A DNA stretch of 64,000 nucleotides from Ostrea edulis (lineage: Eukaryota). This document shows positions 971 through 61,200 of the stretch, one piece after another. The first letter of the stretch is position 1. Each line of letters begins with the position of its first letter. Both the position numbers and the translations under genes were made by a program. The notes under the pieces were generated by a model. It saw nothing but the letters and a program-made list of their open reading frames with translations, made no database searches and was not told where the DNA came from. The stretch covers positions 72,974,001 through 73,038,000 of the forward strand of contig NC_079169.1 of assembly GCF_947568905.1 (NCBI RefSeq), written 5' to 3'.

Positions 971-1198
971 TTGGGGATCCAGGTTAGAATAGGTCCACAG
1001 TACCCCTTGCTTGTCGTAAGAGGCAACTAAATTGGACGGTCATTCGGATGAATCCCCAAAACCGAGGTCTCGTTTCACAGCAGATGTGGTTCGATAAAGA
1101 CTCTTCCGTGCTCAATGGTCATAAGCGCCGAGCATAGGCGTAAATACAGCCATTTGAGTGAAAAATTCTCGAACAATATACAATCAATCAATCACAAA
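971..1198 (+). mobile_element. SINE-like repeat copy
   Basis: Same head (GGGGATCCAGGTTAGAATAGG), core and CAATCAATCAATC tail as the other copies. Confidence 0.75.
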
Positions 1199-1261
1199 GA
1201 ATATGCTCTGAGTGACATTGACCTTTCCAAGATGACTGGTATAAAAGCCGTTTGCCGGTTA

Positions 1262-2393
1262 CTTATTTTTGTGCAAAACTTTTCTCAAATCAACAACATC
1301 AAAACGTATGACTTTTCAACACTTTACACGACCATTCCTCACAATAACTTAAAGACTAGACTTTTTTACATCATAAACAGTTGCTTCTTCAACAAAAATG
1401 GAAAACGCAAATTATTCATATCTAGTGATTAGTCATTCAAAAATGACTGTTAAAACACCACTCTGATTCAATGCACAATTACTCTAAAGTTGAAATACCA
1501 AATATGCTGGAGTTCATCATTGACAATATCTTCCTGGTCTTTGGTGATCAGGTCGTCAAACAGTATGTTGGAAAATTTTCATGGGCACGAATTGTGCTCC
1601 TTTCTTAGCTGACCTGTTTTGTATTCCTATGAAGCAGAATTTATTCAAAAACTTCTACGTGAGAAGGAAACATCTCTTACTGTGGCCTTCAATTCGACAT
1701 TTAGATATATCGACTTTTTGTCCATTAACAATAACTTTCATTCATATGTCGATTCGATATATCCATGTGAACTCGAAATAAAAGACACCACGGAGTCGTC
1801 CACTTCTGCTTCATACTTAGATATTTCATTGAAAGTAGATACTAACGGCAAACTAACAACTCAACTTTATGATAGAGGGGATTATTTCAGCATCTCTATA
1901 GTCAACTCCCCATATTTATGTAGCAATGTTTTATTATCGCCTGCATACGGTGTAGATATATCTCAGCTGATTCGATACGCAAGGGCTTGTTCTGCGTATG
2001 GTCAGCTTTTAAATCGAGGCAGGCTACTGACAAAGTTGATGGTGCAGGGGTTTCAACAGTCTCGTTTGAAGTCAGCATTTCTCAAATTCTCTGGTCGTTA
2101 TAACTATCTAGTTTGCCAATACAACCTATCATTGGGTTGAATGCTGTCTGACGTGTTTCATTCCGATAGTTAGACCTTTCTCGGCACACTGACTTTGACT
2201 ACGGATAATTCCGTTTACCTGATCAAAATAGAGGGCTCATGGCGGGTGTGACCGATCGACAGGGGATGCTTACTCCTCCTAGGCACCTGATACCACCTCT
2301 GGTATGCCCAGGGGTCCGTGTTTGCCCAACTCTCTATTTTGTATTGCTTATGGGATTTATGAGATTGATCACTGTTCGTTGTCTTCACCTTCC
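1262..2393 (+). mobile_element. Penelope-like retroelement, 5'-truncated, degraded RT plus 3' UTR
   Basis: ORF pieces TYDFSTLYTTIPH, MGTNCAP.LADLF, TFRYID, LY.R.D.F...IVN.P.L.SN are PLE-type RT motifs; frameshifted; ends at CTTCACCTTCCAT. Confidence 0.85.
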
Positions 2394-2411
2394 ATTCATG
2401 ATAAAAAAAAA

Positions 2412-3978
2412 CCTGAGTAAACTCAGGTGACCAATTGCAATTGGTTGTCGTCCATCGTGCGTTAACAATTGAATATTTTTAACGTCTTGATAACTACCAT
2501 TCCATTTTTATTTTTCAAATGTGGCATGAAGCATCATTGGGACAAGTGGGACATAAATTGTAAATTGCAGTACTCTTGCACCCCTAGGGCCTTAGGAGCT
2601 GGGCAAAAAACTGCGAAAAATTGACAATTTTTCAAAACTCTTCTTCTCTACAACCGCACAAGTGTAAGAAAAACTATATGTATAGTAATGTAGAGGAGGA
2701 GGGCTTCTACCAAAATTGTATATTTCTTGATCCCCGGGGATAGAGGTTCTGACCCCAGGGCGGGGCCAAACTTGATGCATAGCGTTTGTGTGTAAAACAT
2801 TTAAATATTTTTAGTGTTATTGGTACTAAATTAAAACTAAATAGATATTTAGAAAGAGCAGATAGTCCTTTACCAAAATTGTAAATTTGATGATTCCAGG
2901 TGTAGGGGTTTTGGTATCAGGGTGGGGTCAAAGAGGGTCAGTTATTACATGTGTGAACTTCTTGATACCTACCATTCTATTTTTTTTTCCAATTTTGTAT
3001 GAAGCATCTTTGGAACAAGGCGGACGTAAATTGTGAATTTCTGGATTCCTGCACCCCTGGGGCCTTGGGGGACAGGGGAAATATTGACACACTTTTAGTT
3101 TGTTTTTCTTTTCTACAACCGCAACTTCTGTAGGAAAAACTAAATGCATAGTGATGTAGATGTAGATGCCCAACTATCTATTTTGTATTGCTTGTAGGAG
3201 TTATGAGATTGATCACTGTTCGTTATCTTCACCTTGCATAAGGAAGAACTGTACCTAAATTGGGAATTTCATGATCTCCAGGGTAGAGGTTCTGACCCCA
3301 GGGTGGGGCCAAATTTGTTATATACAATGTATATGTGTAAAACATTTAGATAATATATTTTTTAATGCTATTGATACAATATTGAAAATAAATAGATATT
3401 TAGAAGAAGTAGACAGTTCTATGCCAAAATTGTAAATTTCATGATCCTATGGGTAAAGGTTGGTCCAGAGTTGAGCCAAAATTATGAGAGTGATTATATT
3501 TTCTTTATCATTTGAAATACGTCTTGAAGTTTGCAGAAATGGTATATTTAGAAAAAGCAGAAAAGGATGTACCAAACTTGTGAATTTCACAACCCCAGGG
3601 TATTGACGCTAAGATGGGTCCAAATTAGATGTAGTCATATTATATTAATGTTACGCATATTATATTATGTAAAGCCTTTCGTCACTATAAGCACGTTCGA
3701 TGGCAGTTAAAAGAAAGATGTGATTTTAAAACCTGTTCATGTACTTTTGTTGAATATAATATTCAAAACAGGAATTTTGTTTCTAGATTTCATAGGCCTT
3801 GGGACTAGTGATACATATCATGTAAAACTTATACGGTACCAATTTTGATGCACCAGATGCGCATTTCGACAAATAATGTCTCTTCAGTGATGCTCAACCG
3901 AAATGTTTGAAATCCGAAATAACTATGAAGTTTTATAACTAATATTCAGGTGACCGATAAGGTCTGTGGACCTCTTGT
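2412..3978 (-). mobile_element. Helentron/HINE-like non-autonomous element with degenerate internal tandem core
   Basis: CTCAGGTGACC start, repeated AAATTGTAAATTTCATGATCC..GGGGTAGAGGTTCTGACCCCAGG units, and CAGGTGACCGAT..CCTCTTGTT end. Contains a PLE 3' fragment (3168-3239) and the hammerhead element. Confidence 0.65.
3850..3893 (-). ncRNA. Minimal type I hammerhead ribozyme (copy 1, inside 113-bp element 3823-3935)
   Basis: Minus strand reads GCAUCA CUGAAGA GACA-UUAUU-UGUC GAAA UGCGCA UC UGGUGC: complete catalytic core, stem II, palindromic stem III and a 6-bp stem I. Confidence 0.85.
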
Positions 3979-4440
3979 TGAAAATACCTGAGGGTATGAA
4001 CAGCAATGCTTAACGCCAGCATACTTTTCATGAAGCGCTAACGCGATTTATGAAGTATGCACGCTAAAGCGATTGATGAAGTATGCACGCTAAAGTGATT
4101 GATGAAGTATGCACGCTAAAGCGATTGATGAAGTATGCACGCTAACGTGATTGATGAAGTATGCACGCTAACGCGATTGATGAAGTATGCACGCTAACGC
4201 GATTGATGAAGTATGCACGCTAACGCGATTGATGAAGTATGCACGCTAACGTGATTGATGAAGTATGCACGCTAACGCGATTGATGAAGTATGCACGCTA
4301 ACGCGATTGATGAAGTATGCACGCTAACGTGATTGATGAAGTATGCACGCTAACGCGATTGATGAAGTATGCACGCTAACGCGATTGATGAAGTATGCTG
4401 GCGTGAAGCTTTGTAGTTCATGCTCTCATGATATTTTCAA
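3978..4440. mobile_element. Foldback/MITE-like element with about 50-bp imperfect TIRs enclosing a 26-bp minisatellite
   Basis: Left TTGAAAATACCTGAGGGTATGAAC...ACGCCAGCATACTT is the near reverse complement of right AAGTATGCTGGCGT...TTCATGCTCTCATGATATTTTCAA. Confidence 0.65.
4030..4397. repeat. 26-bp minisatellite, about 14 copies
   Basis: Unit ATGAAGTATGCACGCTAACGCGATTG is directly visible. Confidence 0.95.
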
Positions 4441-4954
4441 ATCTTAGATAAAACGCAATAAACACAACATGCACCGAGGCGTAACGTTTTCAAAATATTT
4501 TTGCATCGTTACACTCCAAAAAATAATACTTTCCAGTTAATAACTCGATTGTGTGAAATAGGCAGGCATGTATGATCCAGTGCACTCAGTACGATATCTA
4601 AACAAACATCCACAAGGACCTGTGCACTGCATGATATATTTCACCGGGACAGTTACATCCGATGTCGGTATGTCAAAAATTTGTTCCAAACATTTGAATG
4701 TTTCTGGGTGAATTCCGTATTCTAATAATTAGTTTACAAATTGTAAATGGAACTTATTTGTCATAGAGCATTTAATTGATGAATGTATATTATTGAAAGG
4801 TGAGCACTCGTGTCTACGTAGACGGGGCAAAGGTTCTTCTTTACATTTGCAATACATGAGGTTCACGTACTATCCATCACTGACTCAAATTAAAGACAAG
4901 GTATAAACAGATATTCATTTTACAGACATCACAACATTTCTTTAGACATGTACA

Positions 4955-41846: not shown

Positions 41847-44800
41847 TCAAAACTCCTTGAATGCAATCACAAACCTCAAAATGTCAAATAGAGCGATAAA
41901 AAGACCCCAGATAATTATTATCGTAATTCCCACATAACCGATTCTAACGGACGACGGTCGATAGTCGGGCGCACTTGTTAGCTTCCTGGTAAAGGCCGAT
42001 AATTTCCGAACGTCCAGTTCCAGATCCAGTTTTCTTGTAGCTATGCGTTCGGAGACAGTTGTGTTTGTTTCCTTACAGACACACGTGCAATATGAAGATT
42101 TAAAGATGGGGCCGATTGTCGTTGCTTCTATCTCTGTAGTTCTCTTTTGAGATGTTGTTTGAGTAGTTGTTGTTGTTGTTGGAGATTCCAATGAAACAAG
42201 ACCGTGTTGTTGTGTTCCTGCCGATGGGATAGTGGTCCCTATCTCTGTAGTTGTCTTTTGAGATGTTGTTTGATTAGTTGTTATAACCGGTGTTGTTATA
42301 ACGGCACATACAGTATCATCTGGCATTGAAAATAGCTCTAAAAGATACAAATCGACTTTTTATTTCAAAGCTTTGCTTATTTCTATCATAACAAGGGGTG
42401 AATCAAACTGGATGTTCCTTTTTAGTTTAAATCGAAATTGTCGGAAAACTTCAAGAAAGAATATTTTTCTTATCTAAGCTGCAATTTGTAATGCAAAGAG
42501 AAAAACTAAAACGGTGCACATTGACGGTAAATGCAGCTAAATAACAACTTCTAAAATATCTCGGTGTAGAATAGATTATGCACGGTGTATTCTTCACATA
42601 CGTCAATATCATTTTCTTCGATTTCTTAGCTCACCGGAGTCACGTATTTAGAGAAACATTGCTATCTGTTTTCTTCCGTCGTTGTACGTCGTACGTAAAC
42701 TTTAGAATATTTTTAGTTTCTTCATTTGAGTTGAACCAATTCCAACCAATTTTGGAATATAACATCTATGGGTAAGGGGAATGAAAATTGTTAATTCCTT
42801 GGACCCTGCCTCCCTTGGTCTCGAGGGGTGTGACCAAAACCATCAAAATTATGCAATCTTCAAAACACATTTTACTCCATGACACCAAGCAGTCAAAACT
42901 TTTACACGATTATAATATTGATAGGCAATGAGTCTTGTATACTTGTGAAACTGATGACCCCTAGCTTTAAGTCTCAGGTTGGGCATAAGTTGACCATATA
43001 TTCAAAATGTATTTATATATCTTGGAAAATTTTCCTTTTTTTACTTTTGGACATTAAGGAGGCAAATGTTTGCATGATTATAATGACTACTCAATGTTCT
43101 ACCAAAATTGTGAAATTCATTACTCTTGGGTTTAGGCCCCAGGGTTGCACTAAGTTGGTTATATATTGAAAATTGCGTTATTCATATTTCAGAAACCTTT
43201 TTAAGCTTCTGGACATTAAAGAGTTAACATTTTTACAACATTTCGTTATCACATATGTCGGTCTCTGAACTGATTCGATACGCGAGAGCATGTTCTGCAG
43301 ATGATCAATATTTGAACAGATTACTGACATATAAGTTGATGTTACATGGGTTTCAACAGTCTCTTTTAAAGTCAAGATTTTTCTAATTGTATGGTCTAAT
43401 TTACAAATACAAGGTGTCACTGGATCGAATGCTTCCTGACGTGTTTCACACTTATTGTTAGGCCGTTCATTATAAACTGATTTTAACAACGGGTTACTCC
43501 CCCTTTACCAGATTAAAATATATGTTTCACGGTGTGTATGAACGTTCAACAGAGGATGCTTGCTCCTCTTAGGCACTTATCCCACCTCTGGTAGGTCCAG
43601 GGTCCGTGTTTGCCCTTCTCTTAATTTTGTATTCTTATAGGATTTATGAGATTGATCACTGTTCGTTATCACAACTTGTTCATGATTATAATGATTACTT
43701 AATCCTTTACTAGTTTGTGAAATACACGACCCCTCGGTTTAAGGCACTGAAATTTTCTTCACTTTTGGACATTAAGGAGGCAAAATGTTTGGATAATCAT
43801 AATGAGTACTCAATCCTCTATCAAAATTGTGGAATTCATAACCCCTGGATTTAGGGTTCAAACCCCAGGGTGTAACTAAATTGGTCATACATGTACATTG
43901 AAAATACATTGTATCTTAGAGAACAACTTCTTTATTTCTGGACATCAAGGAGGCAAATTATTTACATGATCATAATGAAAGGTGAAGATAACGAACAGTG
44001 ATTAATCTCATAACTCCTATAAGCAATACAAAATAGATAGTTGGGCAAACACGGACCCCTGGACACACCAGAGGTGGGATCAGGTGCCTAGGAGGAGTAA
44101 GCATCCCCTGTCGACCGGTCACATCCGCCGTGAGCCCTATATCCTGATCAGGTAAACGGAATTATCCGTAGTCAAAATCAGTGTGCATTGAACGGCCTAA
44201 CAGTCGGTATGAAACACGTCAGACAGCATTTGACCCAATGATAGGTTGTATTGACGAACTAGATCGTTATACTGACCATAGGATTTGCTAACTTCAATCG
44301 AGACTGTTGAAACCCCTGTATCATCAACTTGTTTGTCAGTAGGCTGCCTCGATTTAAAAACTGACTATACACAGAACAAGATCTTGCGTATCGAAGCAGT
44401 TGAGAGATATAAACACCATATGCAGGTGATAATGGAATATTGCTACATAAATATGGGAAGTTGACGATGGAGAAGCTGAAATCATCCCGTTTGTCATACA
44501 ATTGAGTTGTCAGTTTACCGTTAATTTAATGAACACTGAATTGTCTACTAAAATTGTGAAATTTGTGATTCTGGGTTCATATGCTATTATCATTGCATTA
44601 ACAAGCAAGCATGGATTTTTCAACTGAATATTAATAAAATATTCGTTTTGGGCCCTTTTGGTAAATTACTTAATAATATGTTAGAACGAACGTAACACTA
44701 ACAAAGACTTTATCAACATATACATGTAACCCTTTTTTCCTTACCAGAGGCGCATATTTTCTCTGAAAAGGTCCACTGCGGCGAGTGGGGTAGGTCTGTA

Positions 44801-45548: not shown

Positions 45549-47760
45549 AAGTGCACAATAGTTGCTAAAGCCGACCGAAGCTCAATATAAATTGAAGAAG
45601 GACTGCTCCAAGATTCGGTGAAGTCCAAATATCCAGTCGAGCGGAATCTCACCTGAGATTATAGCAACCTCAACAAAGTTCCCGATATACGGGACAATGA
45701 TCTGCCTTTGGTGTTTTTTGTTTTTTTTGTTTTTTTTTGAAATTCGAGTTGTGTTCGTGGAACACCTGTAAAATTATATTATTTGAAACAAATAGAAAAC
45801 CTGCGAGCCATTCATATGACAGTACACATTGTATAATGTCATAATAATAATATGTGGCATTTAATGTGCGGCATTTTTTTTTTATAATGTAGTTAAAGTA
45901 AAACACGAAATAGGTATATAAATAAACTGATGTGGAATGTATGAGCACTGAATCATTTAGAAAATGAGAATCAATATTTTCTACAGTGGGAAACGAGTAA
46001 AATGTATATTTTTACCTGTTGGGTAGGTAAACGCAATGCAATGTAGTACCACCAATAGTTGAAAAATTGCCTGCTTTGTCTGAAATGTTTAAGGTAAAAT
46101 CTACTTTACAATTAATATCCTATCGGCAAAAATTACTGCTTGTCGTTTGACCACATCACAAATGTGGTGAATTTACTATATACTTTCGCAATACTTGTAC
46201 CTATGTTCCATCAGAAGTGGTCTATTCGATTTATTAACGATGGACGGTATAGGTAAGTAGCTCACAGTCACATGCACTTATTAATAAAGTATATATACGT
46301 GATTTTCTTCAGTGCAGTCTGGCGCTATGATTATGTTTTACAGTGAGAAACGTTGTTTTGATATTACGATCTCCAAAGACTGTGGAAAATTTATGTCGAA
46401 GAATTAAGTCATTCCTAAACCACGGATCCAGTTGACCATGCTCGACAAACACAGCAATAAACACCACATTCAATCTGTACACCGCAAACAAGATGTACAA
46501 GGGATTTAGCCGAGACCTAAAAACTATTGCGTAATAAACAGTGGCTCGTACAACAGGATCTTGCTGTAAACAAAATCTTATTTATGTTTCTTATTCAGTA
46601 ACAGTGGCTTTACTGCGGTCCCGTGATTGTGCGTGTTTATAGGTGGAGAAGCTATCATAAAACTACTGATTATCAATTCGAAGTTTTACAAAAGATGTTC
46701 TTCATGATTGCGGACAAGGAGAGTCCAGTACGCCATAATAGGCAGCTGAAGTTTACAGCCCCTGAGTGTCCTTGTCTATTATATTCAAATATTATAATAA
46801 AACGGATATTTGCAAGATATCACCCAGTTTCTTGAACCTTAACGGTTATGTCTAGTATGTAATACCTTTAGTGGCTCGGCTCTAAAACAAACGGAATCTG
46901 CTATAAAAAAAAATTAAAATATATACAGATCATGTATTCAAGCTACGAAATTATGCAGAATTGATTATTTTTATGTGGACAACGACTGAAAATAGGTTCG
47001 AAAAGGTAATGAATATTTGAAATCACCTAGTGAAAATAAAGCGGAGAATTAATGACATCAAAATTCTTACGTTTTTAGGCATTTTATAATTCCCAAACGT
47101 ACAAAATGTTGTTAGCTTGGGAGGTTTTAAAATTCGCAATGGCCTACTAAAAAATTCAGCATCCTCGAAAGATCTTTAATGTACATGTAATTGATGAAGT
47201 GATGCACGCAACTATTAACGAATATTGACTTTACTAACATCTTTGTGTTAGAAATAAAACCACGACTCTTTGCAACTCTGGAAAGTAGACCAAATTCGAC
47301 TTTTAATTTGAGCAAATATTTACCTCACTCTTATCTCCCATTAAAGACAAAATAATCGGTAATCGCTGACGGCACTAATAGTTACTAAAGTCTACCGCAT
47401 TGTCTTGTCAAAAAACGTTTCCGCAAAGTGTTGAAAATTTTGATCACATGAAGTAGCTATAGAATACATTTGCTGTATTAAAAAAAGGGCTGTGGGCGAA
47501 GTATTTGTTATCTCTCCCTGTATTCAAATTGGACAAGATGTTACATTATGGCGATAACTTTTCGATTGTAATACATTGAAAACTATTTACACCCTAATTT
47601 GGGGACTACATTTTACTATTTTGTAGATTTCATGAACATTGTCACAAGTTTGGTGACATAATATTTATTTGTTCTAAAGAAGTCAATTTTTGTCAAACCT
47701 AATCAGAAGCCAGGAGGGCCATCTTGTAGGAATGCCGTAATTTAACGTGAATGCAATTAC

Positions 47761-48420
47761 AACACACAAATACCGTAAATATTTGTGTACCCACTCCAGT
47801 TAACAACACACAAATACCGTAAATACTTGTGTACCCACTGCAGTTAACAACACACAAATACCGTAAATACTTGTGTACCCACTGCAGTTAACAACACACA
47901 AATACCGTAAATACTTGTGTACCCACTCCAGTTAAAAACACACAAATATCGTAAATACTTGTGTACCCACTCCAGTTAACAACACACAAATACCGTAAAT
48001 ACTTGTGTACCCACTCCAGTTAAAAACACACAAATATCGTAAATACTTGTGTACCCACTCCAGTTAACAACACACAAATACCGTAAATACTTGTGTACCC
48101 ACTCCAGTTAACAACACACAAATATCGTAAATACTTGTGTACCCACTGCAGTTAACAACACACAAATACCGTAAATACTTGTGTACCCACTGCAGTTAAC
48201 AACACACAAATACCGTAAATACTTGTGTACCCACTGCAGTTAACAACACACAAATACCGTAAATACTTGTGTACCCACTCCAGTTAACAACACACAAATA
48301 CCGTAAATACTTGTGTACCCACTCCAGTTAACAACACACAAATACCGTAAATACTTGTGTTACCACTCCAGTTAACAACACACAAATATCGTAAATACTT
48401 GTGTACCCACTCCAGTTAAA
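47761..48420. repeat. 44-bp minisatellite, about 15 copies
   Basis: Unit AACACACAAATACCGTAAATACTTGTGTACCCACT(C/G)CAGTTAAC. Confidence 0.95.
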
Positions 48421-49616
48421 GTGAACTGATCTTTTCACAACAAGAACGGTCACCCTTAAGTCGGAGAGTCTTTTCAAGTGAAGTTAGATCATGCAATAAA
48501 CTTTACAGTATCTGAAATATAATCAGGAAACCACGGTGTTGCACACAGACAGACACTTGATTGACAGACGGATGGCCAGACCCAAATGAATATACTATGA
48601 TTTCGCTAAAGCGGTGATACAAATTAAAACTTTATGAGTTCCATTTTTATTATATCTCAAGGAATTGTACCACGGTTATTGCAGAGATAAGAGAAATGCA
48701 GCGTTCATTATTCTCCAATAAATACCGATCAATGAACAGATTATCAGAACATATTCAACGTCCAGAAGAAAAAAAATATATGGGTTGAAAATGTAATACT
48801 TCTTAAGGTCATAGCGGTTTCACGTATTCGACCTGATTATGACATTGTTTATTGCCTTAAAACAGGTGTTAAATGTCTTTTATGACTTTTCCACGACCCT
48901 ACATACTGTTTTACACTAATACAACAATAAAATCGATAACTGATAAATTTATTCAATTATCATCAAAAATATTCAATGTATGTTACAAACAAATTTATGA
49001 ATGACCGAAGAATGTTTGACATTAAAAAAAACCACCTGTCGGTGAGATTGATACACATGTTAACAAACATGGAGATGTACAGGCAAGTTGACTCACAGTA
49101 TCTGTTCATGAATTAATGTTCTTGCGATTTGGAGTCTATGAGTCATTTCGCGAAATTAAGTACTCGCGTAAAATGAGGAATCAAACGTATGGTGGACGGG
49201 ATGAAAATGTATTTTACGTCATCTTAAAATAAACAATATATTCACCTTATATTATTTGGGTAATCCCAAAGTATTATGATGTGTTATAATGAACTCAACT
49301 TTATGACAAACGGGATGATTTCAGCTTCTCCATCATCAACTTCCCATGTTTATTGTAACATATGAGACCTTTCATGTTGAAGTATGTCCATTCTGGATAA
49401 GATTTATTACAATTATTGTACTTGATTCTAAATTATTTTATCAAGCTTAAGCAGCATGTATTATGTCTTGTTTTAACTCAGATTTTGTTCACATAACTTA
49501 TAGTCATACCGTTCGTGTTTTGACAACATCCCCCATTTTGGATCATTTGTGTACAAATTTTATTCTTTAAATTCCTTCGCAAAATACGGCAAAAAATTTG
49601 TACACAATAAGGTACA

Positions 49617-52244: not shown

Positions 52245-53600
52245 AGTAAATGTGAAATCGCAAAACTTTTCTCAAATCAACAATATGACTTTTCAACACT
52301 TTACACGACCATTCCTCACGATAAATTAAAGACTAGACTTTTTGACATCATAGACAGTTGCTTCTTCAACAAAAATGGAAAACGGAAATATTCATATCTA
52401 GTGATCAGTCATCCAAAAATTGACTTTCTTAAACACCACTCTGATTCCACACACAAGTACTTTGAAGTTGAAATAAAAAATATGCTGGATTTCCTCATTG
52501 ACAATATCTTTGGTGATCAGGTCTTCCAATAGTCTGTTAGAATTTCCATGGGCACGAATTGTGCTCCTTTGTTAGCTGACCTCTTTTTATATTCCTATGA
52601 AGAAGAATGTATTCAAAAACTTCTACGTGAGAAGAAAAAAATATCTTGCTGTGGCCTTCAATTCGACATTTAGATATATCCACGACATTTTATCTATTAA
52701 CAATAATAATTTTCATAATCCCGTGGGGATCCGGATTAGAATAGGTCCTCAGTACCCCTTGCTTGTCGTAGAAGGCGACTAAATGGGGCGGTCCTTCGGA
52801 TGGGATCGAGAAAAAAACAAGGTCCCGTGTCACAGCAGGTTTGGCACGATAAAGATCCCTCCCTGCTCAAAGGTCATAAGCGCCGAGCATAGGCCTAAAT
52901 TTTGCAGCCCTTAACCGGCAGTGGTTACGTCTCCATTTGAGTGAAATATTCTCGAGAGGGACGTTAAACAATATTCCATCAATCAATCGTATGTCAATTC
53001 GATATATCCCTGTGAACTCGAAATAAAAGACACCACAGAGTCGTGCACTTCTGCTTCATACTTAGATATTTTATTGAAAGTAGATATTAACGGCAAACTA
53101 ACAACTCAACTGTATGACAAACGGGATGATTTCAGCTTCTCCATCGTCAACTTCCCATATCTATATAGCAATATTCCATTATCACCTGCATATGGTGTTT
53201 ACATCTCTCAACTGATTCGATACGCAAGATCTTGTTCTGTGTATGGTCAGTTTTTAAATCGAGGCAGGCTACTGACAAACAAGTTGAAGGTACAGGGGTT
53301 TCAACAGTCTTGTCCAAAGTCAGCATTTCGCAAATTCTTTGGTCGTTATAACGATCTAGTTTGCCAATTCAACCTATCATTGGGTCAAATGCTGTCTGAC
53401 ATGTTTCATAGCAATTGTAAGGCCGTTCTTGGCACACTGATTTTGACTACGGATTACTCCGTTTACCGCATCAAGATATAGGGCTCACGGCGGGTGTGAC
53501 CGGTCGGCAGAGGATGCTTACTCCTCCTAGGCACCTGATCCCACTTCTGGTGTGTCCAGGGGTCCATGTTTGCCCAACTCTCTATTTTGTATTGCTTATA
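52245..53600 (+). mobile_element. Penelope-like retroelement RT fragment plus 3' UTR
   Basis: YDFSTLYTTIPHDKLK, MGTNCAPLLADLF, TFRYI.DILSINN, LYDKRDDFSFSIVNFPYL; interrupted by a SINE-like insertion. Confidence 0.9.
52720..52987 (+). mobile_element. SINE-like repeat inserted into the PLE RT
   Basis: Splits the NNNNFH|SYV coding segment; family consensus with AATC tail. Confidence 0.85.
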
Positions 53601-54634
53601 GGAGTTAGGAGATTTTAGTTTATGGTATTTTTCACAGAAAGAAATTACCAAACGATACAAATTTGTGACGCTTGCTACCCTAATTCTACTGCGACATAAC
53701 ACCCCTGTGTTTAACGCTATATTTGAAAGACGTGAGACTTTCACCTCATGTGTTGGCGAAGGAACGGTAACTTATATGTGACGTCTTAGGTTTGATGCGG
53801 CGCCGGGGTCTAGAACCCGTGACTCGGTTGCTAAGCGAGCGCCATAACTACTGGGATACTGCGACCGGTAACTGCATAAGTAACTTTTGGAGAAAACTCT
53901 TCTTGGCTTATATGACTTGCCAAACAAAATAAGATTTAGAGAAAGTAATGCCATGTTCTGACGTTTGCCTCATGTATAAAACCTCACAATAAAGGTTGAT
54001 GCAAGTCAACTCTAGGTAGATCTTGACAATCGCAAGATAATCTGCACGTCAACGTTAACCCCATTTTACATTTATAGAAATTTGATCGAACTATCCACAA
54101 ACAACAAAGCCATGTACCTGAGGTTTAACAGCAGCAACATTTCATCATAGAACCATCACATTGTCACCGTGATATATCTTCTGAAGAAACCTCTCACTCT
54201 GTCCAACGACCATCAAGGACAAATACTTTAAGACACTCATCTGAAACCAGACTCAATATGCATCCACTGCATGTGCATTGATGATCAAAAGACGAAACAG
54301 AATTCGTAAATATGTTTTAATTTCAAATAAATAAATGCTTATCACAGTTTGGCAAAGAACTAGTATAATTTCATACAAAGTCATGCATCTTGGGACGGAA
54401 ATTACTCAGCTATGTATAAAATGTAAATGCATAAATTTTCACATCTGGCGACAAATGTTACATGTATACATTCATAATTCCGTAAATGATTAAAATGTAG
54501 TCGATGACTAGTGTAGATTATAAAGGTATTGACATCGGGATTTTGTCAATACAAAATGAGTCAGTAAGTGAAATAAGCTTTACCCAAATGGTCTTTGAAA
54601 AATAATTAATACACTGGTATTAAAATCAATTTCA

Positions 54635-58200: not shown

Positions 58201-61200
58201 ACGTTTAGAATTTAGCACCAACATAAAGATATTCAAAGATATGTAAATGCCTGTCAATTTGTGAATGTATTACTATTAGCTATTGTCCATGGTAGCATCC
58301 GATTTTGTAAATGTCTTTTGAAGATTTATCATCACATCATTATGGCATTGGACAGCTGTTTGTATAATTACAACCAACGTTTTTGTGTATTGAGTTATAA
58401 TTTATTCTGGGCTGTACGTTTCTTGTATTAAAAAAATAAAAACAAGATTGAAATTTGTTACCCTCTGAAACACACATATGAATAAAAATAAGAAACTATA
58501 TCTACATGCACACCACACATAACTCAAAAGTAGCTCTATAGTTGCTAAGTAATGTGCTTCTGCAAAAATATTCACCGTAATTTTTCAAAAACACAGTGCC
58601 CACAAAGACTCCTGCAACAAGAGGTACTGTGAGCAATGCTCACTAAGAATACCCCCCGCTTACTCCAATCTCCCAAAGGGTGTTGGTAATAGGTATAAAC
58701 TACCTCTTTTCTGAGTGTAAAAAACAAATGGCATGACAAACCGAACCATATTGCTACTTCGATGTCCAGTGCGCGTGACCTTTGACCTTTTGACCCCAAA
58801 ACCGATAGGGAACATCTTCATCCCATGGGTAGTCCATATGTATGATATGGTGACTGTAGGTGGAAAGGATAACGCTTTAGAGCCCGGAAACCATATTACT
58901 ACTTCAATGTCCAGTGCACTTGACCTTTGAACTTTTGACCCCAAAATCGATAGGGAACATCTTCATCCCATGGGTAGTCCATATGTATGATATGGTGACT
59001 GTAGGTGGAAAGGATAACGCTTTAGAGCCCAGAAACCATATTGCTACTTCCATGTCCAGTGTGCTTGACCTTTGACCTTTTGACCCCAAAATCGATAGGG
59101 AACATCTTCATCCCATGGGTAGTCCATATGTATGATATGGTGACTGTAGGTGGAAAGGATAACGCTTTAGAGCCCGGAAACCATATTGCTACTTCGATGT
59201 CCAGTGCGCTTGACCTTTTGACCCCAAAATCGATAGGGAACATCTTCATCCCATGGGTAGTCCATATATATGATATGGTGACAGTAGGTGGAAAGGATAA
59301 TGCTTTAGAGTCCGGAAACCATTGCGTCTACGGACGGACGGACGGACGGACAGACGGACAACCTGATTCCAGTATACCCCCCCCCCCCCACAACTTGTTG
59401 CGGGGAGTATAAAAATGAAGGAAAGCCAAACAGCTAAACAAAGACTGCACTTCGCCATGTGCATTATCTCCACGAAATTGCTTCGTCACAAGAGAAACGA
59501 CAATGCCCAGCATAATTTCATTTTCTATTCAAGCCTATAAAATTGTTTTAAGTGTGTTTACTTATTCCTTTTCAACCCTATCCTAAATTGTTTGCAGGTT
59601 TTGTTATGGTTTTTGTTTTGGTTCCAATTTGCATCCATTTAAAACAAGAGGCCCATTGGCCACATCGCTCACCTGAGCAGCAGTTCCAAGCAATAAACAA
59701 AAAACTACTATAAATTTCTTATTTTACGCGAGTACTTATTGTCGCAAAAATGAATCATCGACGTCAAATCTTTGTAGACGGGCATGACCTTTCATATCAA
59801 CAAATTTCATCTAACCTAAGGATGTTTTGTGCCAAGTTTGGTTCCCTACACGTGACATTCGTATGTAAAACTTTGATCCCCTATTGAGGCCCCACCCTAA
59901 CTGCAGGGGTCATATTATTTACAAATTTGTATCTCCACTTTCTCATGAAGCTTTCATGTAAACTTCAGCTTTTCTGGCCTAGTGGTTATTGACAAGAGTT
60001 TTAAATGACCCGATCCTATTTTTGTGATTATCACCCCTTTGAAGTTGGCATGGCCCTTCATTTGAACAAACTCGAATCCCCTTTACCTGAGGACGATTTG
60101 CATTAAGTTCGATTGAAATTGATCCATTTGTTTTCGAGAAGATTTTTCTTTATATCAGCATGTAAAACTTTGACCCCTTTATGTGGCCCCACCCTACTCT
60201 CGAGGGCCATGATCTGAACAAATTTGAATCTACTCTATATCAGAAAGCTTTCAGATGTAAAACTTATACGGTACCAATTTTGATGCACCAGATGCGCATT
60301 TCGACAAATAATGTCTCTTCAGTGATGCTCAACCGAAATGTTTGAAATCCGAAATAACTATGAAGTTTTAGAGTTCTCTACTCCTCTGCCCAAGGGGTTC
60401 TTGAGAAGATTTTTTGAATTTTTATAAATTCGTATTTATAACTTTGGAAGCTTTCATGTAAATTTGAGCTTTTCTGGCCCAGTGGTTCTTGAGAAGATTT
60501 TTAAATGACCCCCACCATATTTTTGCATTTTTTGTGATTATCTCGCTTTTGAAGGGGCATGGTCCTATATCTGAGCAAACTTGAATCTCCTTCACCCAAG
60601 GCTGCTTTGTGCCAAGTTTGGATGAATTTGTCCCAGTTGTGCTGGAGAAGACGATGAAATTGTGGAAAGTTTATGACGACGTCGACAGACAAATTTTGAT
60701 CAGAAAAGCTCATTTGAGCCTTCGGCTCAGGTGAGCTAAAAAGGTTGTGGTCATTTCCCCGCAGTAAACAAGCTATAAGAACTACTGTTATTGAAAACAG
60801 AAAAACAGCGAAGTTGATTACTAAAAGCAATACCATTAATGGCAGAAATGTTAGCTAAGCAGAACAAACAGGTCTTGTGTATATACAGAATAATACTGAT
60901 ATTATCTGGATAAATTTAAGCTAAATAGAAGTCACTGATATTGTTAATGTAGATCCATGTAAAACCATAAGAGAGAATAGACAGCTGCCCCCTAATTACC
61001 TATTTCATTCGTTGAAACCTCTGTTACAGAAAAATATTGCCATTTCAGAAAAAATATCATTCAAGTTAAATCAATACTCAACTCAAATTAAATAATTTTC
61101 TAATGTAAGACAATGTTTGATATGTCGAAATAATTATTCAAAAGTTAATGATCTTAATATATATGTTTAATACGTCAAAATATCTATTTATAAGTTAATG

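What the first reader, a model, noticed from the sequence alone, without database searches (positions are those of the whole stretch)
3823..3935. Young 113-bp mobile mini-element carrying a minimal hammerhead ribozyme, three copies in 64 kb
Seen: 3823-3935 and 60258-60370 are identical over 113 bp, 56 kb apart, and a truncated third copy at 17809-17877 is flanked by a 9-bp direct repeat (ATAATGTAA). The minus strand folds as stem I GCAUCA/UGGUGC, core CUGAAGA, stem II GACA-UUAUU-UGUC, GAAA, palindromic UGCGCA and a UC cleavage site. All three copies share the same left junction (ATG|TAAAACTT), and both full copies end in the inverted octamer AAGTTTTA. Known: minimal type I hammerheads with palindromic stem III occur in Penelope pLTRs and retrozymes and are thought to cleave as dimers. 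Inferred: a recently active, non-autonomous, self-cleaving retroelement mobilised in trans, shorter than typical retrozyme monomers.
Basis: partly seen in the sequence, partly recalled or inferred. Interest (0 to 1): 0.8.

Follow-up and report, generated by a model that had tools for sequence, protein, structure and literature searches.

The report
Truncated oyster hammerhead retrozyme copies
The three repeats are real, but they are broken-off tail ends of a very common 351-base non-coding mobile element of this oyster genome that carries a self-cutting hammerhead RNA motif, a kind of element already described in other animals, so the finding is ordinary.

Summary
Window 3820-3935 and 60255-60370 are identical over 116 nt (not 113: the "ATG" belongs to the repeat). 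A third, shorter copy lies at 17806-17877. The minus strand of the two long copies carries every conserved hammerhead nucleotide.

The 113-bp "mini-element" is not a unit. In the window's own genome the 32-nt ribozyme core occurs 15,242 times. The real unit is a 351-nt non-coding repeat. In 59 independent insertions, those not interrupted or 3'-cut end at the same 3' terminus (...GTTTTACAT), while their 5' ends scatter from unit position 1 to 329. About a third are [partial copy][full copy]n head-to-tail arrays.

The window copies are unit 236-351 (twice) and 280-351, that is, solo 5'-truncated insertions. The "inverted octamer" is simply internal consensus sequence at the truncation point. 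The two long copies are identical because both equal the family consensus.

This is a bivalve member of the animal non-LTR retrozymes, non-autonomous elements probably mobilised by Penelope-like elements.

The scan had already met this family elsewhere in the same genome. Cleavage, circular RNA and the autonomous partner remain untested here.

The parts
3820..3935 (-). Solo 5'-truncated copy of the 351-nt hammerhead retrozyme (unit positions 236-351). A weak, gapped resemblance to unit 225-235 continues to 3945 and may be chance.
   Evidence: 100% identical to 60255-60370. BLAST to the family unit gives 225/236-351. Equals the majority consensus of 53 ungapped family copies.
3850..3893 (-). 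Complete type I hammerhead motif: helix I 6 bp, CUGAAGA, helix II 4 bp with a 5-nt loop, GAAA, palindromic AUGCGCAU, C17. The predicted cleavage lies between + strand positions 3856 and 3855.
   Evidence: Read directly. Passes the descriptor scan. The dimer minimum-free-energy fold is the double hammerhead.
60255..60370 (-). Second solo 5'-truncated copy (unit 234/236-351), inserted into a local host repeat. Both junctions lie in microhomology with the target.
   Evidence: Paralogous uninterrupted copies of the host repeat read ...TTCATGTAAATTTGAG... at the site.
60285..60328 (-). Complete hammerhead motif of the second copy. The predicted cleavage lies between + strand positions 60291 and 60290.
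17806..17877 (-). Third, shorter 5'-truncated copy (unit 280-351; 2 substitutions). The hammerhead has lost most of the 5' strand of helix I and has a U-to-A change in the 3' strand, so it is probably inactive.
17803..17811 (.). Left copy of the 9-bp direct repeat ATAATGTAA. This is the target-site duplication; ATGTAA overlaps the element's own terminus.
17876..17884 (.). Right copy of the 9-bp direct repeat ATAATGTAA.

Best explanation
The three repeats are dead-on-arrival, 5'-truncated insertions of a 351-nt non-coding retroelement. This element is present in more than 15,000 copies in this ~895-Mb bivalve genome, which earlier notes of the scan call flat oyster. Each unit carries one type I hammerhead (unit 278-321, cleavage after 315) whose helix III is only 2 bp with a palindromic GCGC loop, so it should be active only when two copies pair.

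Inferred life cycle, taken from the published retrozyme and Penelope-like-element (PLE) models:
1. Head-to-tail arrays are transcribed.
2. Paired hammerheads cut out 351-nt monomers, which a host ligase circularises.
3. A reverse transcriptase supplied in trans, most likely from a PLE, starts at a fixed internal site (...UUUUACAU, unit 351, 36 nt past the cleavage site) on a nicked AT-rich target, often helped by microhomology.
4. It copies towards the 5' end. If it goes round more than once it leaves [partial][full]n arrays. If it stops early it leaves a solo 3' fragment such as the 116-nt and 72-nt copies seen here.

The window copies cannot propagate. The two long ones still hold an intact ribozyme that could cut a host transcript only by pairing with another copy.
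For: Shown by the sequence:
- Hammerhead consensus fully met.
- For the 44-nt motif the monomer hammerhead fold (-3.7 kcal/mol) is worse than the monomer minimum free energy (-7.8). The two-strand minimum free energy (-27.3) is exactly the double hammerhead with an 8-bp intermolecular helix III.
- 15,242 cores genome-wide against 0 for the control pattern.
- The unit is 351 nt, with pairs of cores spaced 348-353 nt apart.
- 59 independent arrays: those not interrupted or 3'-cut end at unit 349-351, and 5' ends run from 1 to 329. In the less biased sample (L001-L030) 15 are solo truncated, about 9 are [partial][full]n, and 3 start at position 1.
- Upstream 32-mers are about half as frequent as the core: 7,705 and 6,186 against 15,242.
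- Every copy is continuous across the cleavage site, and none in the sample ends at unit 315. The template was therefore uncut or religated, and initiation was internal.
- Short target duplications often overlap the ACAT terminus. The paralogous empty site for copy 2 shows microhomology at both junctions.
- The window 116-mer equals the family consensus.
- No ORF in the unit. GC is 39.6%.
- RNA-library contigs of 377 and 321 nt from two studies carry the unit.

From the literature:
- Animal retrozymes of about 300 bp with type I hammerheads are expressed as circRNA in mussel, coral and axolotl (PMC7229834).
- Helix I of 6 bp, helix II of 4 bp and a short palindromic helix III make the usual metazoan type I architecture, which acts as a dimer (PMC4209133).
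- PLE reverse transcription starts at an internal RNA site on AT-rich targets and leaves partial tandems (PMC11167929, PMC8557442).
- Vertebrate retrozymes are related to PLE pLTRs (bioRxiv 10.64898/2026.07.22.740005).
Against: - No Rfam hammerhead model matches, even at E <= 10 on a 361-nt stretch.
- Self-cleavage, circular RNA and reverse transcription were not observed here. The runs laid down were contigs only, which cannot show ends or strand, and DNA carry-over in the RNA libraries is not excluded.
- The 351-nt RNA is not unusually structured (z = +0.40), unlike plant retrozymes.
- No autonomous partner was identified. None of the 30 best GIY-YIG loci carries the unit as a flanking repeat.
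- Two of three window copies share the same apparent truncation point, which pure chance explains poorly. Microhomology and a weak preference for this point are the offered explanation.
Confidence: 0.87

Rival explanations
1. The 113-116-bp form is itself a mobile mini-retrozyme: a short subfamily re-mobilised in trans, with the 8-nt inverted ends marking its termini.
For: Two of three window copies start at the same place and are identical. At least 6 further independent copies start exactly at unit 236 among 30 loci examined. That is perhaps 2-3 times the per-position expectation, a rough estimate.
Against: Copies starting at 236 are about 0.6% of the 3,515 copies with that exact 27-mer. They carry no diagnostic substitutions: the 116-mer equals the consensus of the whole family. 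No tandem array of 116-nt units was seen. In two loci a 236-start copy is simply the partial first member of a [partial][full]n array (L035, L045). TAAAACTT is internal consensus sequence.
Confidence: 0.04
2. The copies are remnants of the pseudo-LTR of a coding, autonomous Penelope-like element, not of a separate non-coding retrozyme.
For: The partial-tandem arrangement, the fixed 3' end, the AT-rich targets and a hammerhead near the 3' end are all PLE traits (PMC8557442, PMC11167929). The genome holds more than 1,100 GIY-YIG candidates, some with intact 787-aa frames.
Against: In 59 arrays the unit repeats directly every 351 nt with no ORF between units. Long ORFs near copies belong to unrelated, separately inserted elements. 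The 30 best GIY-YIG loci do not carry the unit as a flank: two contain incidental copies only. Only 30 of more than 1,100 candidates could be inspected.
Confidence: 0.06
3. A DNA-transposon-derived MITE with 8-bp terminal inverted repeats (TAAAACTT...AAGTTTTA).
For: The 8-nt inverted repeat sits at the ends of the 113-bp stretch.
Against: The repeat continues 3 nt beyond one 'TIR' (ACAT) in all copies. The other 'TIR' is internal to longer copies. 5' ends are variable and 3' ends fixed. Target duplications vary in length.
Confidence: 0.01
4. A satellite DNA spread by unequal crossing-over or segmental duplication rather than by retrotransposition.
For: Head-to-tail arrays exist, with up to 5 units in the sample. 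Some copies were clearly multiplied by segmental duplication (L054-L058).
Against: More than 15,000 cores are dispersed over all ten large contigs, mostly as solo fragments or short arrays with unrelated flanks, fixed 3' ends and short target duplications.
Confidence: 0.02

Closest known systems
Metazoan non-LTR retrozymes (Cervera & de la Pena 2020, PMC7229834), e.g. the ~350-390-bp repeats of Mytilus galloprovincialis
   Same: A non-coding unit of a few hundred bp (here 351), with low GC (39.6%) and one type I hammerhead per unit. It forms head-to-tail arrays, has thousands of copies in a bivalve genome, and is present in RNA libraries.
   Different: Circular RNA and self-cleavage were not shown here. 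Most genomic copies are solo 5'-truncated fragments rather than arrays, including all three in the window. Sequence similarity to the mussel family was not tested, because no mussel sequence was at hand.
Hammerhead-bearing pseudo-LTRs of Penelope-like elements (Cervera & de la Pena 2014, PMC4209133; Craig et al. 2021, PMC8557442; Frangieh et al. 2024, PMC11167929)
   Same: [Partial][full] tandem insertions, a fixed 3' end that is not the ribozyme-cut end (internal initiation), AT-rich targets, a palindromic short helix III that implies a dimeric ribozyme, and heavy 5' truncation.
   Different: There is no RT/GIY-YIG ORF between the repeats. The hammerhead has the 'canonical metazoan' proportions (helix I 6 bp, helix II 4 bp), not the PLE 'min-HHR' form (long helix II, short helix I). 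No sequence similarity to the sampled PLE loci was found.
Schistosoma Sm-alpha SINE-like repeats and newt satellite 2 (from my own knowledge of Ferbeyre et al. 1998 and Epstein & Gall 1987; both are cited within PMC4209133)
   Same: Abundant short non-coding repeats, each with a type I hammerhead that needs a second copy for efficient cleavage.
   Different: Different host phyla and unrelated sequences. No comparison was run here.

Membership tests
Hammerhead ribozyme, type I | Conserved core C3-U4-G5-A6-N7-G8-A9 ... G12-A13-A14, A15.1-U16.1, H17 (not G), G10.1-C11.1 | tested here: met
   CUGAAGA, GAAA, A-U closing pair, C17 and the G-C first pair of helix II are read directly and found by the descriptor scan in the copies at 3850-3893 and 60285-60328.
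Hammerhead ribozyme, type I | Three helices around the core with helix I open (5' and 3' ends in helix I) | tested here: met
   Helix I is 6 bp (one G-U), helix II is 4 bp plus a 5-nt loop, and helix III is 2 bp plus a GCGC loop as a monomer or 8 bp between two copies. The two-strand minimum free energy of -27.3 kcal/mol is the double hammerhead.
Hammerhead ribozyme, type I | Match to a curated Rfam hammerhead covariance model | tested here: not met
   No hammerhead family was reported at the gathering threshold on the window, or at E <= 10 on 3700-4060 and on L021 1440-2010. The very short helix III is the likely reason, but that was not tested.
Hammerhead ribozyme, type I | Site-specific self-cleavage | not testable with these tools
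   Only assembled contigs were available for the runs laid down. No RNA ends can be read from them.
Metazoan non-LTR retrozyme | Non-coding unit of ~150-450 bp with one type I hammerhead, found as head-to-tail repeats, GC < 45% | tested here: met
   Met for the family: a 351-nt unit, arrays of 2 to at least 5 units, GC 39.6%, no ORF. The three window copies themselves are solo truncated fragments, not arrays.
Metazoan non-LTR retrozyme | Expression as unit-length linear and circular RNA | tested here: inconclusive
   Contigs from RNA libraries of two studies (377 nt and 321 nt) carry the unit. Genomic DNA carry-over cannot be excluded, and circularity is invisible in contigs.
Non-autonomous derivative of a Penelope-like element | PLE-type insertion signature: fixed internal initiation site, 5' truncation, partial tandems, AT-rich target | tested here: met
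   Arrays that are not interrupted or 3'-cut end at unit 349-351, 36 nt beyond the cleavage site. 5' ends run from 1 to 329. There are [partial][full]n arrays. Flanks are commonly ...CAT/ATA/TAT.
Non-autonomous derivative of a Penelope-like element | Sequence similarity of its 3' part to the pLTR or 3' end of an autonomous PLE in the same genome | tested here: inconclusive
   BLAST of the unit against the 30 best GIY-YIG loci (+-1.5 kb) found only two incidental copies.
MITE (DNA transposon derivative) | Terminal inverted repeats at both true ends and a target duplication of fixed length | tested here: not met
   One 'TIR' is internal to longer copies, and the other is followed by 3 more conserved bases. 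Target duplications vary from about 3 to 11 bp.

The most novel reading that the evidence does not exclude
The family may carry a clean genomic footprint of PLE-type internal initiation acting on a circular or multimeric retrozyme RNA in a mollusc. The footprint has four parts: a fixed DNA 3' end 36 nt past the ribozyme cut site, an uncut ribozyme site inside every copy, [partial][full]n arrays, and microhomology at both junctions. The 8-nt inverted repeat (unit 236-243 / 341-348) would make position 236 a mildly preferred 5' junction. With over 15,000 copies, this family would be a natural data set for mapping how PLE enzymes start and stop on retrozyme templates.
Probability: 0.3. Interest if true: 0.35.

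Novelty: new member of a known kind. Interest (0 to 1): 0.15.

Why it matters
It matters little as a discovery. Hammerhead-bearing retrozymes and their link to Penelope-like elements are published, and the scan had already met this same family elsewhere in this genome.

The useful outcome is a correction. The 113-bp 'mini-element' should be annotated as 5'-truncated copies of a 351-nt repeat, not as a new, unusually short class.

The family is large and young: the window copies equal the consensus. It could therefore serve to study how retrozymes are reverse-transcribed in bivalves (initiation site, truncation, microhomology), and whether solo ribozyme-bearing fragments affect host transcripts.

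Tried and rejected
- Rfam at the gathering threshold and at E <= 10: no hammerhead hit. This is treated as a limit of the models, because the consensus is met by direct reading.
- The genome search with the 113-mer as DNA returned nothing, not even the window itself. The tool skips very common words, so the blank is uninformative.
- Hot spot at unit 236. Of 3,515 exact copies, 105 have a non-consensus base before TAAAACTT, and 6 independent true truncations were found in the 30 loci examined. A control position gave 184 non-consensus hits. This is at most a weak preference.
- Idea that the unit's first 90 nt are a promoter 'head' shared with a SINE family (seen in L006/L009): rejected. The junction occurs only 3 times, all in one region of C1. 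There is no tRNA and no tRNA/5S/7SL Rfam match.
- Idea that the 351-nt RNA is a viroid-like rod: not supported (z = +0.40).
- Search for the autonomous partner among 30 GIY-YIG loci: none found. Other hammerheads there (L064, L071) have different stems and tails.
- Read laying gave contigs only, with no RNA ends, no strand and no circle test.
- The resemblance of 3936-3945 to unit 225-235 (8 of 11 bases with one gap) has a rough chance probability of about 5%, my estimate. It is left open.

Full report
**1. Observation**

The two long copies are real. The repeat finder gives 3820-3935 and 60255-60370 as 100% identical over 116 nt, with a third partial member near 17806.

The 9-bp direct repeat ATAATGTAA flanks the short copy, at 17803-17811 and 17876-17884.

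On the minus strand both long copies read GCAUCA-CUGAAGA-GACA-UUAUU-UGUC-GAAA-UGCGCA-UC-UGGUGC. A descriptor scan of the whole window finds exactly these two complete hammerheads. It also finds the third copy, which has lost most of the 5' strand of helix I.

Three cores in 64 kb is not remarkable. The genome-wide density predicts 1.09 per window, and P(>=3) = 0.10.

**2. Is it a hammerhead?**

All invariant core nucleotides are present, together with the G10.1-C11.1 pair, A15.1-U16.1 and C17.

Helix III is only A-U and U-A closed by GCGC. The whole 8-mer AUGCGCAU is a palindrome.

With ViennaRNA the monomeric hammerhead fold of the 44-mer (-3.7 kcal/mol) is worse than its minimum free energy (-7.8). 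The minimum-free-energy structure of two strands (-27.3) is the textbook double hammerhead, with an 8-bp intermolecular helix III, helix II within each strand and helix I between strands.

These are the usual metazoan type I proportions (helix I 6 bp, helix II 4 bp, short palindromic helix III), which are thought to act as dimers (PMC4209133).

Rfam gave no hammerhead match at the gathering score or at E <= 10. I record that as a failed database test, not as evidence against the motif.

**3. What the repeat belongs to**

The 32-nt core (up to 2 mismatches) occurs 15,242 times in the window's own 895-Mb genome, against 0 for the reversed control pattern. Many pairs are spaced 348-353 nt apart.

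It ends on the 3' side at ...GTATAAGTTTTACAT.

A tandem locus gives a 351-nt unit, TATGACCCC...TTTTACAT. Against this unit the window copies are 236-351 (BLAST extends the first to 225 through a mismatched patch), 280-351 and 234-351.

Over 59 independent insertions the picture is as follows:
- Those not interrupted or cut at the 3' side end at unit 349-351, while 5' ends run from 1 to 329.
- In the 27 arrays from the less biased sample, 15 are solo truncated copies.
- About 9 are [partial copy][full copy]n arrays, with up to five units seen in the wider sample.
- 3 start at position 1.

32-mers from unit 62-95 and 160-191 occur 7,705 and 6,186 times, about half the count of the core.

The unit has no ORF and 39.6% GC. 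It has no tRNA-like part and no unusual folding energy (z = +0.40).

**4. The 'mini-element' features explained**

The shared left junction is the element's own 3' terminus (ACAT) read on the opposite strand.

The 'inverted octamer' TAAAACTT is internal consensus sequence (unit 236-243). It happens to be complementary to unit 341-348.

The two copies are identical because both equal the majority consensus of the family. In the less biased sample 4 of 36 other copies are also identical to it, and the median is 3 differences in 116 nt. They are young, but they are not copies of each other.

Is position 236 special? These counts bear on it:
- 3,515 copies carry the exact 27-mer that starts there.
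- 105 of them have a non-consensus base just upstream.
- Among 30 of those loci, 6 independent insertions truly begin at 236. Five further loci are segmental duplicates of one of these events.

That makes about 0.6% of copies, perhaps two to three times a flat expectation (my rough estimate).

For copy 2, uninterrupted paralogues of the host repeat read ...TTCATGTAAATTTGAG... at the insertion site. The target therefore already contained ATGTAAA, matching the element's 3' end, and TTT, matching the truncation point. Microhomology at both junctions explains where the copy begins.

Target duplications elsewhere are short, about 3-11 bp. They often overlap the ACAT terminus, as in the window's third copy.

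**5. Mechanism**

*Shown.* The motif, the unit, the copy number, the fixed 3' end, the variable 5' ends, the partial tandems, the continuity of every copy across the cleavage site (unit 315/316), and the absence in the sample of any copy ending at 315.

*Inferred.* Arrays are transcribed, and paired hammerheads release unit-length RNA that is circularised, as shown for mussel, coral and axolotl retrozymes (PMC7229834).

A reverse transcriptase supplied in trans then starts at a fixed internal site, 36 nt beyond the cut site, on an AT-rich nicked target. This is the behaviour demonstrated in vitro for a Penelope-like element (PMC11167929). It also fits the partial-tandem and 'tail' signatures of PLEs (PMC8557442).

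More than one round of copying yields [partial][full]n arrays. An early stop yields solo 3' fragments such as the window copies.

A 2026 preprint argues from vertebrate genomes that retrozymes derive from PLE pLTRs (10.64898/2026.07.22.740005).

This genome holds more than 1,100 GIY-YIG candidates, including intact 787-aa frames. However, none of the 30 best loci carries the unit, so the partner is unidentified.

RNA-library contigs of 377 and 321 nt from two studies contain the unit. This is weak support for expression, because DNA carry-over cannot be excluded and contigs show neither ends nor circles.

**6. Comparison and verdict**

The family meets the structural definition of a metazoan non-LTR retrozyme and shows PLE-type insertion signatures. 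It fails the tests for a MITE.

The window copies are not a new short class. They are truncated, immobile offspring.

Earlier notes of this scan on other pieces of the same genome (s1-287401, s1-306940, s1-279176, s1-281880) describe the same 349-351-nt family. I re-derived the unit, the copy number and the architecture independently here.

Novelty: a new member of a known kind. Interest: low.

Noticed in passing
window 1100-2420; also 16530-17210, 53020-53640 and 43970-44525 (minus): Several copies of an RT-encoding retroelement (motifs ...FSTLYTTIPH..., ...FNSTFRYIDF/DD...). A relative in L041 gives a weak RVT_1 hit (E = 2.8e-5, below the cut-off). It has a ~250-nt 3' UTR that ends in an A-run at about 2405-2413. 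It is very abundant near retrozyme copies in other loci (L001, L039, L041, L045, L046).
   Followed up: partly
window 3958-4476: A 26-bp minisatellite (about 20 units, 95-97% alike) begins 23 bp from the first retrozyme fragment. No relation to the element was evident.
   Followed up: no
window 47627-48542 and 58744-59356: A 44-bp tandem array (about 20 units) and a 145-bp tandem array (4 units). Neither was examined.
   Followed up: no
L008:1486-1568 and L010:1484-1568: A retrozyme fragment (unit 267/269-351) is nested in the 3' UTR of the RT element above. It is present at two loci with the same junctions, so it was co-amplified as a passenger of that element.
   Followed up: partly
L054-L058 (G000:C3, 68.74-69.01 Mb): Five loci share the same 236-start retrozyme fragment and the same flanks. 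This is a segmental duplication series spanning about 280 kb.
   Followed up: no
L064 (+ strand, around 664) and L071 (- strand, around 2778): Other hammerhead motifs lie next to GIY-YIG loci, with different stems (GCCC/GGGC and GGC/GCC helix II) and a GCGC palindromic helix III. The L071 motif passed the full descriptor; the L064 motif showed only the core with helix II, and its helix I is about 3 bp. They are PLE-type ribozymes of other families.
   Followed up: partly
G000, many places listed (e.g. C1:110503255-110510943, C2:32785322/32789647): Many GIY-YIG matches with identical scores sit in open frames of 787 aa, often as head-to-head pairs a few kb apart. They look like a recently active Penelope-like family with inverted insertions.
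   Followed up: no
L006:1569-1900 and L009 (G000:C1, 285-413 kb): The second unit of a retrozyme array stops at unit position 90 and runs into the 3' UTR of the RT element. This junction occurs only 3 times in the genome, so it is a local event later duplicated.
   Followed up: yes
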